Shown here in pieces: positions 1,321 through 60,640 of a DNA stretch of 64,000 nucleotides (positions are counted from its first letter, which is position 1; each line of letters starts with the position of its first letter). The stretch covers positions 186,001-250,000 of IMG/VR virus record IMGVR_UViG_3300036770_008729; one strand, given 5' to 3'. The translations under genes and the position numbers were made by a program. The notes below the pieces were generated by a model, which saw nothing but the letters and a program-made list of their open reading frames with translations, was not told the origin of the DNA and did no database searches.

Positions 1321-1827
1321 TTACTTCTTAATAACACTAAAATCATTTCTTAAATAATCATCAAAGTTCATCACTCTCTTTTTTGTATTATCTGTCTGTC
1401 CTTGACCTGCTGTAAAGTCTTGTCTTTTAGAAAAAATATCTTTCAGTGATTTTAAACTAATTCTTTTTTTTCTTGATTTCTTACCAGTTCTTGGTCCGTG
1501 ATTAGAACCCATTTCTGTTGGGATTTTCTGAAACACTCTATTTGCACCACTTGGATTATAGGGTATCGAAACATCACCTGATCCAACAGTTCCACCTTGT
1601 GATGCCCAATTAGGACCAATAGTTGCGCCTGCAAGTCCAGATGGTTGTGAATTAACAACAGCACCCATACCACCAGGACTAATACCACCAGTAGCTGAGG
1701 TATCTTCTAGTATTTCATATTCTTTGAAATTTATTAATTCCATGACTTTTTCAAGTAATATAAAATTCTTCTCTTTTTTGAGTTTCCATTTTAAATCATA
1801 TAATTCAAAAAGTGATAAATTTTTCAT
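1321..1827 (-). CDS. Hypothetical Gly-rich protein with CTS-like segment (MELINFKEYEILE)
   Basis: ORF track; TTTAATATATA motif just upstream. Confidence 0.75.
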   Translation of the reverse strand: MKNLSLFELYDLKWKLKKEKNFILLEKVMELINFKEYEILEDTSATGGISPGGMGAVVNSQPSGLAGATIGPNWASQGGTVGSGDVSIPYNPSGANRVFQKIPTEMGSNHGPRTGKKSRKKRISLKSLKDIFSKRQDFTAGQGQTDNTKKRVMNFDDYLRNDFSVIKK

Positions 1828-56295: not shown

Positions 56296-57606
56296 TTATT
56301 GTTCATCTGATAGAGAGTAGTTGATTTCATCCAGAATTGAATCGGTTGGGAATTTTTCTCCTCTTTTATTATAAAAGAAACCATCTCTAAATTTTACCAA
56401 TTCGGAATCATCATTCATATTATCAGGTAATACACAATCATTCCATAATTCGATAATTTGATTAGGTGTAGTAGTTTTGCCAATTTCCACTCTTAATACT
56501 TCGAGTTCTTCTGGAATTTCAATTTGGGGTTCTTGCTCTGATTTAGCTCCTTGTTCTGCTTTTATACGAGCTTCTATTTCTTTGGCATGATCTTCTAAGT
56601 TCTTTGCTGAGGCATCTGCCTTTCTAATAGGATTGCCTTTTTCGTCCTTAATTAGATTGCCGTCTTTATCTAAAAGAAAGTCTTCTTCATATTCTGGTAG
56701 CAACCCTAACTTTTTACGTTGTTCTAAATCTTTTTTATCTCTTTCTCTAATACCAGCAGCGGCTCTTTTATAAGTCTCTGGATTTAATTCTTCATTAACG
56801 AATGATTCAAATAATTTTAGGTATTTCATATTATTTTTACTTTCAGCAACTGATTTTTCAGACTCATCAATTACTCTTTTAAGTTCAGCTGTATTATCAA
56901 CACTAACAACTTCATCAAATCCTTCTTTTGATAAAACATCTTTTATTTTTTCTTCATCAAAAGGAATGCCTTTATCATCTTGTAAGTCATATGATGTAAA
57001 CATTCTATCAAATGCAGCAGGTGGTATAGTTTTAGATTTACCTTTAGCTTTCATTTCTTCTGATCTTTTAGCTGCCATTTTTTTGATAATTTCTTCAGCT
57101 CCTTTGAAGTTAAAAACAACTGCTACTTTATGATATTCGCCTTCAACACCTTCAATAACTTTAAGTGCTCCTTTTCTTGAACCAGAGTTCATATTGGTCA
57201 TATCGACTACAATATTTTCTTTTCCTTTACCTTCGGCAATTCTTTTGTTAAATATATCTTGAATTTTACCGTTAGCTTCTAAAACTCTATCATAAGAAAG
57301 TGGTGCCCAAGTCATATAAGCTGGTGATTTAATAACGGTGCCATATTTTTCATTTTTATCACCTTCTTTTTCAACATCTTTAATGGGTAATGAGAAAAGG
57401 TCATCATATGTCCAACCATACTCTGCATACTCTTCAGCAACTTTTTCGACAATATCATCTCTATTTATTACAAATGGTTGTATTTCACCAAATTTGGTTT
57501 TTATCCAAGTTGATTTACCTACAGATGGAGGTCCAATAAGAACATATATTGTTTTATCTTTAACTTCTTCACCTTCAAATACTCTGAAATTTTTAATATT
57601 CCTCAT
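56296..57606 (-). CDS. P-loop kinase (AAA_33 / PNK-like) with N-terminal and internal CTS-like motifs
   Basis: GPPSVGKSTW, INRDDI, VVDMTNM..SR; MRNIKNFRVFE and MKYLKLFESFVNEE. Confidence 0.8.
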   Translation of the reverse strand: MRNIKNFRVFEGEEVKDKTIYVLIGPPSVGKSTWIKTKFGEIQPFVINRDDIVEKVAEEYAEYGWTYDDLFSLPIKDVEKEGDKNEKYGTVIKSPAYMTWAPLSYDRVLEANGKIQDIFNKRIAEGKGKENIVVDMTNMNSGSRKGALKVIEGVEGEYHKVAVVFNFKGAEEIIKKMAAKRSEEMKAKGKSKTIPPAAFDRMFTSYDLQDDKGIPFDEEKIKDVLSKEGFDEVVSVDNTAELKRVIDESEKSVAESKNNMKYLKLFESFVNEELNPETYKRAAAGIRERDKKDLEQRKKLGLLPEYEEDFLLDKDGNLIKDEKGNPIRKADASAKNLEDHAKEIEARIKAEQGAKSEQEPQIEIPEELEVLRVEIGKTTTPNQIIELWNDCVLPDNMNDDSELVKFRDGFFYNKRGEKFPTDSILDEINYSLSDEQ

Positions 57607-57697
57607 GCTATTATATTTCCTTTTTTATTTATAGTATATATTATAAATTGAGGAGATATTTTTAATAATCAGTTCAACGGTGTATTGGACTCTTTTG

Positions 57698-57810
57698 TAG
57701 TCAGGACAGGAATCGAACCTGCATGTGGGCCTTGTGTGTATTTCAACTATACTGCGGGTTTATCCACTCCGTTTAACTATTCGGTGCGTTTACCATTTCG
57801 CTACCTGACT
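57698..57810 (-). ncRNA. tRNA-scaffold RNA A (113 nt)
   Basis: AGTCAGG/CCTGACT acceptor, GCG/CGC D-stem, GCAGG-TTCGATT-CCTGT T-arm, no canonical anticodon arm. Confidence 0.75.
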
Positions 57811-57812
57811 AT

Positions 57813-57893
57813 TTGAGGATGAGAAGCCCTCTGTGTTGGTAGTAACTCAACTATCTACATTTACTCATCTCCTTTCTCAAGGGAACAACACAA
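57813..57893 (-). ncRNA. Structured RNA, kissing-loop type, copy 1
   Basis: Conserved ends shared with 58888-58981. Confidence 0.55.
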
Positions 57894-57976
57894 AAAATTA
57901 GAGTTGTTTCGGGAGCTTCACCCGCCTTCGAATATACTTGTATCTCTCAGTTAAGAGTCAATACGAGCTTTTTACT

Positions 57977-58348
57977 TTACAACTCAAATAGTATATTATT
58001 TAATTTCATTTCTCTTATTTTTTCATTTAAGTAAGGTCTTTTAGAAAGCATTGACCATACTGGTCCATAATTGTTAATTAGTGGTTTTGTATGGATTGTG
58101 ATATCAGATATATTTAATGTGTAGTCCATTTTTACATAGCCATATCTTTTATCTGCTTTTGCAACACCGGTAGATTCTACTCTGATAAATTCATCAGATA
58201 TGTTAATAATGTTATATTCCCACATATCACCAGCTTCTTCATATCCAGAGTCGTTAGGTATAAACAACCTAAATTGGACTATTGGATCATAAACAAATCC
58301 TAGACTGGCAAATATATCAATCAGGTCTTTAAGTATTTTATTTTTCAT
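57977..58348 (-). CDS. Hypothetical protein with tag (IREMKLNNIL)
   Basis: ORF track. Confidence 0.7.
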   Translation of the reverse strand: MKNKILKDLIDIFASLGFVYDPIVQFRLFIPNDSGYEEAGDMWEYNIINISDEFIRVESTGVAKADKRYGYVKMDYTLNISDITIHTKPLINNYGPVWSMLSKRPYLNEKIREMKLNNILFEL

Positions 58349-58452
58349 AAATTATTAAAACCAATATAAGCAATTATTATTACTAGTATCATAAGGATTA
58401 AACATCCATTATCTTCTGCACCAATTGGGTCGTTATCTAAATTATCATTCAT
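58345..58452 (-). CDS. 35-aa single-TM peptide (MNDNLDNDPIGAEDNGCLILMILVIIIAYIGFNNL)
   Basis: Translated manually; ATGA overlap with next gene. Confidence 0.5.
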   Translation of the reverse strand: MNDNLDNDPIGAEDNGCLILMILVIIIAYIGFNNL

Positions 58453-58457
58453 AAATG

Positions 58458-58563
58458 TAGTCAGGACAGGACTCGAACCTATAATCTGAATAACCTATAT
58501 CATCTTGATTTATTACCAATGATATTTTGTATTCACGCTTTAACCCAATTTCGCCACCTGACT
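58458..58563 (-). ncRNA. tRNA-scaffold RNA B (106 nt)
   Basis: Same acceptor; ATAGG-TTCGAGT-CCTGT T-arm; elongated helix in place of anticodon arm. Confidence 0.75.
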
Positions 58564-58569
58564 AATTAA

Positions 58570-58709
58570 AATATGAAGGCATATCGGTCGTTCCCAAGTT
58601 TGAATGATTAACCCCTGCCATACTCTTTGACTCGCTAAAGTCATACCATTTGAGATGTTAATCCTTGTCTGATTGGACTATACGTAACTCATCCACTCAG
58701 CTTCATATT
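58570..58709 (-). ncRNA. Stem-closed RNA element (140 nt)
   Basis: Terminal IR aatatgaag/cttcatatt between scaffolds B and C. Confidence 0.45.
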
Positions 58710-58712
58710 GTG

Positions 58713-58883
58713 TAGTCAGGACAGGACTTGAACCTGTATGTTTAGTTTTTACACTTTCACTTTTGATCAGATACTTGTGAAGGATGTTAATCAGACTTCG
58801 GTGAGATCAAATCACCTACACATCTACTCTAAACTTAACCTACCCTTTAGGATTTTCACGTCTACTAATTCCGTCACCTGACT
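58713..58883 (-). ncRNA. tRNA-scaffold RNA C (171 nt)
   Basis: Same acceptor; covarying D-stem ACG/CGT; ACAGG-TTCAAGT-CCTGT; multibranch insert. Confidence 0.75.
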
Positions 58884-58887
58884 ATAT

Positions 58888-58981
58888 TTGAGGATGAGAA
58901 GTCCTCTGTGTTGTAGAAGATTACACATCTATTCTTCTCTTTGCATTTCAGTTTCATTCCTTTCTCAAGGGAACAACACAA
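58888..58981 (-). ncRNA. Structured RNA, kissing-loop type, copy 2
   Basis: TGTGTTG/CAACACA stem, CCTT-GAGA-AAGG, GAGGA-CTTCTCA-TCCTC. Confidence 0.55.
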
Positions 58982-58988
58982 TATTTTA

Positions 58989-59203
58989 TAAACAACTACC
59001 GCCTTCTAAGTTGGGTGTTTGTATAGGCCCAAACCCCTATACTCCATCCTTTACATAATTTTTCAATGTATCTATAAACACATTAACCTAAACCACCCAC
59101 ATCTTAGAAATGTGAGGTAACTCTTCCTACTCTGACATGATTAATAATGACCGTTGATAATCATTAATAGAGTCAATATTTAGTGTTAATCAGTAGTTGT
59201 TTA
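58989..59203 (-). ncRNA. Stem-closed RNA element (215 nt)
   Basis: 13-bp terminal stem with a G-U pair on the minus strand; internal hairpins. Confidence 0.5.
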
Positions 59204-59206
59204 ATA

Positions 59207-59218
59207 TTTCAAAGAACT
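59207..59218 (-). promoter_or_regulatory. boxA-like AGTTCTTTGAAA
   Basis: 3' of scaffold D; repeated 3' of element E. Confidence 0.45.
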
Positions 59219-59223
59219 ATTTG

Positions 59224-59345
59224 TAGTCAGGACAGGATTCGAACCTGTAAGGTAACATTCGGTTTCAAGACTCTCCTCTATACCGATCAGAGGATGTAGT
59301 TACCACTTTACTCGTCTAATGCGTCTACCATTCCGCCACCTGACT
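59224..59345 (-). ncRNA. tRNA-scaffold RNA D (122 nt)
   Basis: Same acceptor; GCG-GAATGGTAGA-CGC Leu/Ser-type D arm; ACAGG-TTCGAAT-CCTGT. Confidence 0.75.
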
Positions 59346-59350
59346 ATGAA

Positions 59351-59422
59351 ATACCGATGCCTTTACTTTCACGAGGACTTGCGTGTCTTCTTAACATTAC
59401 TGTCTTAGGACCCCATCGGTAT
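59351..59422 (-). ncRNA. Stem-closed RNA element (72 nt)
   Basis: IR ataccgatg/catcggtat. Confidence 0.45.
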
Positions 59423-59426
59423 ATTA

Positions 59427-59653
59427 TGAATCAATCAAGAGCACTTATCTTTATGTTCAGAAGGTCATTCTCTATTCCACAAATTAATTTTACAGATGGT
59501 AGTACTTTTACAAAAACTTTTGCGTGTTTTATGCTCGGACTTATACACGTTATCAGCCATTAAAAAAGCAGGCCTATCGTAAACACTTACTCAAAGGATG
59601 GACATCAAGGAGCCTAATCCCCAATGAATTGGGTTTAACCAGTGATTGATTCA
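59427..59653 (-). ncRNA. Stem-closed RNA element (227 nt)
   Basis: Perfect 11-bp IR tgaatcaatca/tgattgattca. Confidence 0.45.
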
Positions 59654-59674
59654 ATATATTCAAAGAACTATTTG

Positions 59675-59750
59675 TCGTTAGGGTAGGACTCGAACCTACA
59701 ATCTTTCGGGATTTTCACCCGAACGCTCTATCAAATTGAGCCACCTAACT
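59675..59750 (-). tRNA. tRNA-Phe-like element with damaged anticodon arm (pseudo-tRNA E)
   Basis: AGTTAGG acceptor (A1-G72 mismatch), GCTC/GAGC D-stem, TTCGGG-TGAAAAT-CCCGAA, GTAGG-TTCGAGT-CCTAC. Confidence 0.6.
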
Positions 59751-59756
59751 ATAATA

Positions 59757-59788
59757 CAAAGATAATAATAATTTTTATTATGACCAAA
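59757..59788 (-). promoter_or_regulatory. Bacteroidota promoter TTTG-N20-TATCTTTG driving the ncRNA array
   Basis: -7 box ends 6 nt before the first base of element E. Confidence 0.65.
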
Positions 59789-59808
59789 TTTATTCTGCTT
59801 TTAAACAA

Positions 59809-59835
59809 TACAAAAAAACGTAGCGGATTTTTGTA
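59809..59835. repeat. Inverted copy of the TACAAAAATCCGCTACGTTTTTTTGTA palindrome
   Basis: Reverse complement of copies at 54541, 54850 and 56211. Confidence 0.85.
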
Positions 59836-59839
59836 TTGT

Positions 59840-60640
59840 TTAAATTGGTAGATTTACTTTGGATAATATTTGGTTCGAAACATGAGTGTAAATTTCAGTA
59901 GTTTTTACATTTGAGTGACCTAATATTTTCTGAATTACTCTTAAATCAGTACCATTTTCCAATAGATTTGTTGCACAACTATGTCTCAATTGGTGAATGT
60001 GATATTTTTCACCCAAATATTTTTTAACAATTTGATTACAGCTACCAGAACTATATTGTAAACTATTTTGACCATTGAAAAGGTATTCTTTTGGTCTATA
60101 TTCTTTAAAATATTCTCTAAGTAATTCTAATATTTTCTGGGATAGGGGTAAGACTCTATCTTTTCTACCTTTAGCATTTTTAATATGAATAATCATTCTT
60201 TTGGAATCGATATCTTCAATTTTAAGGTTAATTACTTCCGATACTCTTAATCCGACTGAATAAGTTAAAGATAATATCGTTTTATGTTTAAGATTAGTAA
60301 TTTTAGATAATTGTTCTTTAATGTAATCACCATCAATAACCTGTGGTAACTTCTTCTCAGATTTGGGTCTTTTGAAACTAACCTTATCATATTTCTTATT
60401 AAGTCCGAATTTGTAGAGGAAACGGATTGCGTTAATAACCTGATTTTGTTGTGAAACAGAAGTAAAACTATAAGTATCTAAATATGATTGAAAATCATTA
60501 GATGTGAGTCTAGTTGGTGAAATTTTTATTGTAGCTAAAAATTGATTAATATAATGGAGATAGGATTTTATTGTCCTATCTGAGTAATTTAAATACTTCA
60601 ATTTTTGATTACAAATTTCGTAATAATCTGTTTTTTTCAT
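59840..60640 (-). CDS. Tyrosine recombinase (integron-integrase-like N-domain, XerD-like catalytic domain)
   Basis: GLRVSE, NAKGRKDR, HQLRHS, LGH, TEIYTHV; catalytic set intact. Confidence 0.92.
   Translation of the reverse strand: MKKTDYYEICNQKLKYLNYSDRTIKSYLHYINQFLATIKISPTRLTSNDFQSYLDTYSFTSVSQQNQVINAIRFLYKFGLNKKYDKVSFKRPKSEKKLPQVIDGDYIKEQLSKITNLKHKTILSLTYSVGLRVSEVINLKIEDIDSKRMIIHIKNAKGRKDRVLPLSQKILELLREYFKEYRPKEYLFNGQNSLQYSSGSCNQIVKKYLGEKYHIHQLRHSCATNLLENGTDLRVIQKILGHSNVKTTEIYTHVSNQILSKVNLPI

What the first reader, a model, noticed from the sequence alone, without database searches (positions are those of the whole stretch)
58570..59653. Spacers of the array are themselves stem-closed RNA units
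Seen: almost all sequence between scaffolds is enclosed by terminal inverted repeats: 58570-58709 (9 bp), 58989-59203 (13 bp, G-U on the minus strand), 59351-59422 (9 bp) and 59427-59653 (11 bp), abutting with gaps of a few nt and no convincing ORFs. Inference: a polycistronic precursor cut into many discrete ncRNAs, with tRNA scaffolds as punctuation.
Basis: partly seen in the sequence, partly recalled or inferred. Interest (0 to 1): 0.65.

Follow-up and report, generated by a model that had tools for sequence, protein, structure and literature searches.

The report
Structured RNA genes between phage tRNA-like genes
The stretches between the tRNA-like genes of this freshwater jumbo phage are small structured RNA genes, each closed by a helix joining its two ends; three belong to conserved phage RNA families missing from Rfam, and one turns up as a discrete RNA in lake metatranscriptomes.

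Summary
All four terminal inverted repeats are at the stated coordinates (9, 13 with one G-U, 9 and 11 bp). Stems this long are rare at fixed boundaries: 1 to 19 of 20,000 random intervals of the same phage genome. Three of the four units are conserved RNA families.

- Unit B (58989-59203) has 7 further homologues. Its closing helix is 13-16 bp in all, and 9 of 14 pairs show compensatory changes.
- Unit D (59427-59653) comes in 5 sequence types, and 7 of 10 closing pairs are compensated.
- Unit C (59351-59422) has 12 copies and sits 1-5 nt upstream of a tRNA-Leu-like scaffold in 9 of 10 contexts.
- Unit A (58570-58709) is an orphan and remains unproven.

The remaining spacer (58886-58988) is a fifth conserved motif. 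None of them matches any Rfam 15 family. Homology to other phages stops at the closing stems, and B and D also occur away from tRNA genes, so the stems are the P1 helices of independent RNA modules.

Four metatranscriptome runs hold short contigs covering only the interior of unit B. The polycistronic, tRNA-punctuated processing model is plausible but only indirectly supported. Biochemical functions are unknown. The kind is known (non-coding RNAs in phage tRNA islands, such as GOLLD, ROOL and T4 RNAC/RNAD), but these families appear to be new.

The parts
59785..59814 (-). Candidate Bacteroidota-type promoter (TTTG, 18 nt, TAAATTTG) upstream of the array
   Evidence: Together with an overlapping second match at 59788-59757, these are the only such motifs on the minus strand between 59900 and 58317. 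Consensus match only.
59674..59750 (-). First tRNA gene of the array (aragorn calls it tRNA-Phe, anticodon AAA; the anticodon loop has G at position 33)
   Evidence: Rfam tRNA, 51.1 bits.
59654..59673 (-). 20-nt linker containing the conserved 16-nt trailer CAAATAGTTCTTTGAA, just upstream of unit D
   Evidence: The same 16-mer follows scaffold 4, and a 2-mismatch copy follows a tRNA in L117.
59427..59653 (-). Unit D: 227-nt structured RNA, rod-like with a two-hairpin apex, closed by an 11-bp P1 helix
   Evidence: Ten homologous copies of 5 sequence types. RNAalifold gives 58 pairs, 18 with compensatory changes, and 7 of 10 P1 pairs are compensated. No Rfam match.
59351..59422 (-). Unit C: 72-nt leader motif closed by a 9-10 bp helix, 5 nt upstream of scaffold 4
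   Evidence: Twelve copies, including a second one in this genome. 21 pairs, 4 with compensatory changes. It lies 1-5 nt 5' of an AGTCAGG-type scaffold in 9 of 10 contexts.
59224..59345 (-). tRNA-Leu-like scaffold 4 (acceptor AGUCAGG, class II D arm, T arm, A73) with a non-tRNA central insert
59204..59223 (-). Second copy of the 20-nt linker with the conserved 16-nt trailer, just upstream of unit B
58989..59203 (-). Unit B: 215-nt structured RNA closed by a 13-bp P1 helix. It has a conserved P2, P3 and P4 core and a likely pseudoknot (UCUAAG with CUUAGA)
   Evidence: Homologues in 7 viral contigs, 6 distinct sequences. P1 is 13-16 bp in all, and G-U pairs favour this strand in 6 of 7. 42 pairs, 13 compensated, 9 of 14 in P1. 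MFE z -3.89. RNA-library contigs lie at 59003-59175, 59011-59173, 59004-59191 and 58987-59121, and nothing of comparable length and identity lies on the flanks.
58886..58988 (-). rep2: conserved leader motif (outer helix GUGUUGU/ACAACAC, two hairpins whose loops UGAGAA and UUCUCA are complementary), 4 nt upstream of scaffold 3.
   Evidence: 18 nhmmer matches in the loci held and a 13-sequence alignment. L025 has UGAUAA with UUAUCA, a double change that keeps the loop-loop pairing. It lies 2-5 nt 5' of a scaffold or tRNA in 10 of 16 contexts.
58713..58883 (-). tRNA-Leu-like scaffold 3 with a roughly 110-nt central insert
58570..58709 (-). Unit A: 140-nt orphan spacer closed by a 9-bp inverted repeat. 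Status as an RNA gene is unproven
   Evidence: Inverted repeat: 12 of 20,000 random intervals match it. MFE z -1.58. No homologue in the loci held, 5 related phage records or the metagenome scan.
58458..58563 (-). tRNA-Leu-like scaffold 2 (Rfam tRNA, 35.3 bits, with 39 nt inserted in the anticodon loop)

Best explanation
The window lies in a 281-kb freshwater jumbo-phage record. The 1.3-kb minus-strand stretch 59750-58458 is an RNA island: a chain of small RNA genes with no protein-coding capacity.

Between the tRNA-Leu-like scaffolds lie independent structured non-coding RNA modules: D, C, B, rep2 and possibly A. The terminal inverted repeat of each is its P1 helix, which pairs the 5' and 3' ends.

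Shown here:
- B, C, D and rep are conserved families in many other freshwater phage contigs.
- The closing helices of B, C and D are kept by compensatory changes while their sequences drift. Those of rep never vary, so they show no covariation.
- For B and D, similarity to other phages stops at the closing helix.
- B and D are portable modules also found outside tRNA arrays.
- C and rep are 5'-leader modules that nearly always abut the first base of a tRNA or tRNA-like gene.
- B accumulates as a discrete species of about 190-215 nt in environmental RNA libraries.

Inferred:
- The island is transcribed leftward from a promoter upstream of 59750.
- Host RNase P and a 3' tRNA-end nuclease (RNase Z or E) cut at the tRNA-like elements. 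This fixes the 3' ends of C and rep and frees the modules.
- Each P1 helix insulates its module's folding from its neighbours in the precursor and shields the released RNA from exonucleases.

What the RNAs do after release is not known. Their heavy conservation of unpaired nucleotides and their pseudoknots point to specific binding or catalytic roles rather than simple antisense regulation.
For: - Inverted repeats verified and rare by chance.
- B family: P1 of 13-16 bp in 7 of 7 sequences, 9 of 14 pairs compensated, and G-U pairs make the tRNA strand more stable in 6 of 7.
- D family: 18 of 58 pairs compensated, 7 of 10 in P1.
- C family: closing stem and inner hairpin covary.
- rep family: 18 matches, with one double change supporting the loop-loop contact.
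- For B and D, flanks differ between phages while the units are conserved. D has its own terminator and sits 22 nt after a GOLLD RNA in L140. B follows an ORF in L173 and L175.
- C and rep abut scaffold or tRNA 5' ends.
- No Rfam 15 family matches at E <= 10. Longest open frames are 24-50 aa.
- RNA-library contigs lie only on the interior of B in 3 of 4 runs, and in the fourth they are the only long near-identical match.
- One promoter-like motif upstream, and no minus-strand terminator inside the array.
- General pattern: of 189 inter-tRNA spacers in related loci, 20.6% have significant terminal pairing at p <= 0.05 and 7.9% at p <= 0.01. Random segments give 5.8% and 1.6%.
Against: - Unit A has no homologue and only a modest folding z-score.
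- Single-sequence z-scores for C and D are unremarkable, and C folds better on the plus strand.
- The RNA evidence comes from assembled contigs. These cannot show exact ends or strand, and could in principle include DNA carry-over.
- No RNA ends, processing sites or promoter were measured.
- B and D stand alone elsewhere and are preceded here by a conserved 16-nt motif, so they may be transcribed on their own.
- The closing stems (9-16 bp) are shorter than classical RNase III substrates.
- No partner protein is linked to the arrays, and the function is unknown.
Confidence: 0.8

Rival explanations
1. The units are real RNAs but are transcribed separately, each from its own promoter, rather than cut from one tRNA-punctuated precursor. 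The closing helix would then simply be the first and last element of a primary transcript.
For: B and D occur away from tRNA genes in other phages, and D has its own terminator in L140. A conserved 16-nt motif lies 4-5 nt upstream of both B and D here, and a similar one follows a tRNA in L117. The RNA contigs cover B alone.
Against: The motif does not fit the Bacteroidota -7 consensus. No terminators separate the units. C and rep sit 1-5 nt from tRNA-like 5' ends, which leaves no room for a promoter. A 935-nt RNA contig spans part of a related array.
Confidence: 0.3
2. C and rep are not free-standing RNAs. They are cis-acting 5' leaders of the tRNA-like genes: a new self-cleaving element, or a structure that steers or regulates RNase P maturation of the non-canonical scaffolds.
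For: Their position directly 5' of a scaffold or tRNA is nearly fixed. Unpaired nucleotides and even stems are very strongly conserved, with a loop-loop or pseudoknot contact.
Against: No known ribozyme model matches at E <= 10. Rep also occurs upstream of units that are not tRNA-like in 6 of 16 contexts. No cleavage data exist.
Confidence: 0.35
3. The inverted repeats are DNA-level terminal repeats of miniature mobile elements inserted between tRNA genes.
For: The units are portable between phage contexts, and an integrase gene lies next to the array.
Against: The repeat sequences are not conserved within a family; they covary. G-U pairs make the stems strand-specific. No target-site duplications are seen at the ends. 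The interiors are the conserved part.
Confidence: 0.03
4. Unit A only: its 9-bp repeat is a chance match in AT-rich spacer DNA, and the spacer is unstructured leader or trailer.
For: No homologue anywhere searched. z -1.58, with 11 of 200 shuffles folding as well. The boundaries were chosen after seeing the repeat.
Against: The repeat ends lie 3 and 6 nt from the flanking scaffolds, and 9 bp is reached by 12 of 20,000 random intervals. Every other spacer in the array proved to be a real module.
Confidence: 0.35

Closest known systems
GOLLD and ROOL RNAs (large ornate ncRNAs of phages and prophages)
   Same: Structured ncRNAs of unknown function that lie next to tRNA genes in phage DNA and may be co-transcribed with them (PMC5737381). 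Related arrays fetched here contain GOLLD itself (L128, L140), and unit D sits 22 nt downstream of a GOLLD RNA in L140 and L141.
   Different: No match to the GOLLD or ROOL models in this window or in the phage's second tRNA island. The units are much smaller (72-227 nt against 400-800 nt).
Phage T4 RNAC and RNAD (small stable RNAs of the T4 tRNA region)
   Same: Small phage RNAs of unknown function, confirmed by Northern blot (PMC9697503). That they are encoded with the tRNA genes is from memory of the T4 literature.
   Different: No sequence relationship was tested or is expected. The host and phage lineage differ. The present array carries several different families plus tRNA-like scaffolds.
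Processing stems of rRNA operons, and tRNA punctuation of polycistronic transcripts (bacterial rRNA operons, mitochondria)
   Same: The ends of each mature RNA are brought together by a helix, and tRNAs in between supply RNase P and RNase Z cleavage sites (established knowledge).
   Different: The stems here are 9-16 bp, shorter than classical RNase III sites. For B, C and D they are part of the conserved mature fold rather than flanking precursor sequence. Cleavage was not observed.
freshwater-1 RNA and other metagenome-derived Rfam motifs
   Same: Same habitat and the same phage tRNA islands: freshwater-1 occurs in L128 beside copies of C and rep.
   Different: None of the units matches that model or any other Rfam model.

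Membership tests
Any Rfam 15 family (4227 covariance models, including 6S, Y RNA/YrlA, RNase P, tmRNA, GOLLD, ROOL and all self-cleaving ribozyme classes) | Covariance-model match at or near the gathering score | tested here: not met
   In 57500-59900 at E <= 10, only tRNA hits and chance-level miRNA or sRNA hits appear, and nothing lies on A, B or C; on D only a 12.8-bit sroH match (E 4.4), far below its gathering score of 80. The same holds for homologue loci of B and D.
Conserved structured ncRNA (generic) | Homologues in independent genomes whose helices are kept by compensatory changes | tested here: met
   B has 13 of 42 pairs compensated, D 18 of 58 and C 4 of 21. For A there is no homologue, so it is inconclusive.
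Conserved structured ncRNA (generic) | Detected as RNA | tested here: inconclusive
   Contigs from 4 RNA libraries (3 studies) cover the interior of B at 99-100% identity, and nothing comparable lies on the flanks. Contigs cannot prove transcription, strand or ends. A was not covered; C and D carried only short matches, the one listed (59528-59597, 5 differences in 70 nt) probably from a relative.
tRNA-punctuated polycistronic precursor | A single promoter, no internal terminators, and mature ends at RNase P and RNase Z sites | tested here: inconclusive
   One promoter-like motif upstream and no minus-strand terminator inside the array. C and rep abut tRNA-like 5' ends. Ends were not mapped.
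RNase III processing stem | About 20 bp or more of near-continuous double-stranded RNA formed by sequences flanking the mature RNA | tested here: not met
   The closing helices are 9-16 bp. Cleavage is not testable with these tools.
Miniature inverted-repeat transposable element | Terminal repeats conserved in sequence within a family, plus target-site duplication | tested here: not met
   The terminal sequences differ and covary between homologues, G-U pairs are strand-specific, and no duplications flank the units.
Small protein gene | An open frame conserved across homologues | tested here: not met
   The longest stop-to-stop frames are 24-50 aa. Indels of 1 and 5 nt occur in the D alignment. 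The plus-strand ORF 59357-59563 spans C and D, which are not adjacent in other phages.

The most novel reading that the evidence does not exclude
The island would hold several new functional RNA classes of freshwater phages. C and rep would be new catalytic or RNase-P-directing leader elements dedicated to maturing the non-canonical tRNA-Leu-like scaffolds. B and D would be new portable ribonucleoprotein or self-assembling RNAs comparable to GOLLD and ROOL, acting on the host during infection.
Probability: 0.12. Interest if true: 0.85.

Novelty: new variant of a known kind. Interest (0 to 1): 0.6.

Why it matters
Phage tRNA islands are usually annotated as tRNA genes plus junk spacers. Here almost every base of a 1.3-kb stretch belongs to a folded RNA. 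At least four of the modules (B, C, D, rep) are conserved families absent from Rfam.

One of them (B) is abundant enough to assemble from lake metatranscriptomes. Two (C, rep) are tied to the 5' ends of an unusual tRNA-Leu-like scaffold family found in more than 120 viral contigs.

This gives defined, short and experimentally tractable RNAs for asking what phage RNA islands do. It also gives a simple rule for finding more of them: look for stem-closed inter-tRNA spacers. These are 3.6-fold (p <= 0.05) to 5-fold (p <= 0.01) enriched across 189 spacers.

Tried and rejected
- Rfam at gathering and at E <= 10 on the window, on homologue loci and on the phage's second tRNA island gave nothing but tRNA, tmRNA, GOLLD, group I intron and freshwater-1 elsewhere.
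- BLAST of the array against the GenBank phage collection found no match.
- Homologues of unit A were sought with blastn and iterated nhmmer on all loci held, on five whole related phage records and with one metagenome pattern scan. The only hit was a chance 19-mer inside an unrelated coding region.
- A search for a protein consistently linked to the arrays clustered 859 ORFs near scaffolds. The largest cluster covered 9 loci, so there is no candidate partner.
- The sigma-70 promoter scan was not above shuffles. Terminator-like sites were more numerous than in shuffles (5 against 1.1 expected), but the only minus-strand one lies outside the array.
- Hand comparison of C and rep with hammerhead, pistol and HDV-like cores, and of D with the RNase P P4 region, gave no convincing fit. 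This rests on memory, so it is not a test.
- MAFFT misaligned the long L117 copy of B, so the stems were re-derived from anchors.
- Literature searches for a description of these scaffolds or spacer RNAs found none.
- The first version of the shuffle script timed out and was rerun.

Full report
**Context.** The window is bases 186001-250000 of a 281-kb IMG/VR record classed as a provirus and estimated 94% complete. It has about 30% G+C and 27 aragorn tRNA genes. DNA runs holding the stretch come from subsurface and freshwater metagenomes.

The feature lies on the minus strand. Read 5' to 3' from 59750 to 58458, it runs as follows:
- a tRNA gene;
- a 20-nt linker;
- unit D;
- unit C;
- tRNA-like scaffold 4;
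- the same 20-nt linker again;
- unit B;
- a motif I call rep2;
- scaffold 3;
- unit A;
- scaffold 2.

After a 123-aa ORF the pattern continues with rep1 and scaffold 1 (57698-57895).

The scaffolds share an AGUCAGG acceptor stem, a class II (tRNA-Leu-type) D arm, a standard T arm and A73. Each carries a different 40-110-nt central insert instead of a normal anticodon arm.

**Check of the observation.** All four inverted repeats exist at the stated places and lengths. B's 13 bp include a U-G that pairs only on the minus strand.

With boundaries fixed, no dinucleotide shuffle out of 2000 reached the observed Watson-Crick run. Only 1 (11 bp) to 19 (9 bp) of 20,000 random same-length intervals of this genome did. 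The boundaries were chosen after the fact, so these numbers alone are not proof. The comparative data below carry the argument.

Two corrections to the description. B and D are 20 nt, not a few nt, from the preceding tRNA-like gene.

Open frames inside the units are 24-50 aa at most.

**Unit B.** A core pattern found homologues in 7 viral contigs, 6 of them distinct sequences.
- In every one the ends pair over 13-16 bp although the sequences differ, and L117 is entirely different.
- In the RNAalifold analysis, 9 of the 14 P1 pairs show changes on both sides that keep the pair.
- G-U pairs make the stem more stable on the tRNA strand in 6 of 7 cases.
- Inside lie a conserved 12-bp P2, a covarying P3, and an invariant hairpin whose loop UCUAAG can pair with an invariant CUUAGA near the 3' end.
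- B is the only unit with a strong single-sequence signal (z -3.89).
- In L117, L174 and L177 the unit fills the gap next to tRNA genes. In L173 and L175 it follows a protein gene.

**Unit D.** Ten copies of five sequence types were found. Eighteen of 58 predicted pairs, and 7 of 10 in P1, have compensatory changes. The flanks are unrelated between types. In L140 and L141 the unit lies 22 nt after a GOLLD RNA and is followed by its own terminator-like hairpin.

**Unit C.** Twelve copies were found, one of them elsewhere in this same genome beside a sixth scaffold and a tRNA-Glu. The closing stem and an inner hairpin covary. In 9 of 10 distinct contexts the unit ends 1-5 nt before an AGTCAGG-type scaffold.

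**The rep motif.** There are 18 matches. Its stems never vary across the 13 aligned copies. Two hairpin loops (UGAGAA and UUCUCA) are complementary. In L025 both loops are changed, to UGAUAA and UUAUCA, which keeps the pairing. It ends 2-5 nt before a scaffold or a canonical tRNA in 10 of 16 contexts.

**Unit A.** No homologue was found anywhere searched, and the folding z-score is -1.58. It may be real, since it sits exactly between two scaffolds, but it is unproven.

**Not a known family.** No Rfam 15 model matches A, B or C at E <= 10; D carries only a chance-level sRNA hit far below its gathering score. The homologue loci give the same result. Related arrays do contain GOLLD, tmRNA, a group I intron and freshwater-1 RNA. 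This places the units in the known setting of phage tRNA and ncRNA islands (PMC5737381).

The scaffold 3' half occurs in at least 120 viral contigs. It occurs in only 30 of 185,579 species genomes, mostly freshwater Bacteroidota MAG contigs. The chassis is therefore phage-borne, not a host tRNA. No protein gene is consistently linked to it.

**RNA evidence.** Four aquatic metatranscriptome runs from three studies were laid on 57600-59800.
- In three of them the only near-identical contig (163-188 nt, 0-3 differences) lies wholly inside unit B: 59003-59175, 59011-59173 and 59004-59191.
- The fourth run has a contig at 58987-59121 that departs from the window at about the unit's 3' boundary.
- Nothing of comparable length and identity covers the flanks.
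- One 935-nt contig at depth 115 touches the conserved parts of rep and of a scaffold. It most likely comes from an expressed array of a related phage.

Contigs cannot give ends or strand, and DNA carry-over cannot be formally excluded. Even so, restriction to one 200-nt unit in independent libraries fits a discrete, stable RNA.

**Transcription.** On the minus strand, the only matches to the Bacteroidota promoter consensus lie just upstream of the first tRNA gene (59814-59757). None occurs again until 58316. No minus-strand terminator-like site lies within the array. These are consensus matches only.

**Generality.** Among 189 distinct 60-350-nt spacers between neighbouring same-strand tRNA or scaffold genes in all fetched loci, 20.6% have terminal pairing at p <= 0.05 and 7.9% at p <= 0.01. 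Random segments of the same loci give 5.8% and 1.6%. Spacers that hold two units are missed by this test, so it is a lower bound.

**Interpretation.** The inverted repeats are the P1 helices of separate RNA modules. DNA-level transposon ends are excluded by covariation, by strand-specific G-U pairs and by the absence of target duplications.

The processing model is reasonable for C and rep, which abut RNase P sites. In that model there is one precursor, cuts at the tRNA-like elements, and P1 acts as a folding insulator and exonuclease block.

For B and D the question stays open, because they are stand-alone genes elsewhere and are preceded here by a conserved 16-nt motif. The stems are too short for classical RNase III sites. 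Biochemical functions are unknown.

The closest analogues are GOLLD and ROOL (PMC5737381) and the T4 RNAs RNAC and RNAD of unknown function (PMC9697503).

**Verdict.** The families appear to be new, within a known kind of locus.

Noticed in passing
window 57698-57810, 58458-58563, 58713-58883, 59224-59345; genome 257878-258006; loci L007-L126: A tRNA-Leu-like scaffold family: invariant AGUCAGG acceptor, class II D arm, T arm and A73, with a hypervariable central region and total lengths mostly 69-190 nt. It occurs in at least 120 viral contigs, in arrays of up to 7 copies. A few members are ordinary tRNAs, for example Lys(UUU)-like, Leu(AAG) and Ile(GAU). It is present in only 30 of 185,579 species genomes.
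   Followed up: partly
window 57811-57895 and 58886-58988: The rep leader motif has invariant stems and complementary hairpin loops, and sits directly 5' of tRNA-like genes. Conservation this strong could indicate a ribozyme or a protein-binding site.
   Followed up: partly
G000 genome 258107-258174 (outside the window; L005 about 1729-1796, minus strand): A second copy of unit C has a compensated closing stem (AUGUAGGC/GCGUCUAU). It is followed by tRNA-Glu, then a sixth scaffold and a terminator.
   Followed up: partly
window 59654-59673 and 59204-59223: A repeated 16-nt trailer, CAAATAGTTCTTTGAA, follows the tRNA gene and scaffold 4 and precedes D and B. A 2-mismatch copy follows a tRNA in L117. 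It could be a processing site or a promoter element.
   Followed up: partly
window 59674-59750: The array's first tRNA (aragorn: Phe, anticodon AAA) has G instead of the universal U at position 33 of the anticodon loop.
   Followed up: no
L140 423-1053 and L141 1882-2188: A homologue of unit D lies 22 nt downstream of a GOLLD RNA on the same strand.
   Followed up: partly
run X19, contig record 3: A 935-nt metatranscriptome contig at depth 115 matches only the conserved parts of rep (58956-58980) and of a scaffold 3' end (59219-59247). It is probably a highly expressed array of a related phage.
   Followed up: no
window 59840-60640 and about 60660 onward: A tyrosine integrase gene (Pfam Phage_integrase, E 5e-39) lies directly upstream of the array. 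By eye, the sequence looks more G+C-rich just beyond it (not measured), which might mark the edge of an integrated cassette.
   Followed up: no
window 56296-57606 (minus): A 436-aa ORF with an N-terminal AAA_33 domain, similar to polynucleotide kinases, lies directly downstream of scaffold 1. It may be an RNA repair or end-modifying enzyme.
   Followed up: partly
window 57896-57976: An 81-nt stretch between the 123-aa ORF and rep1 has a partial match (46 nt, 87%) in L095 5465-5510. It may be another small RNA unit.
   Followed up: no
L177 1174-1240: A weak YrlA (Y RNA-like) match (32 bits, E 0.002, below the gathering score) lies in a related phage tRNA island.
   Followed up: no
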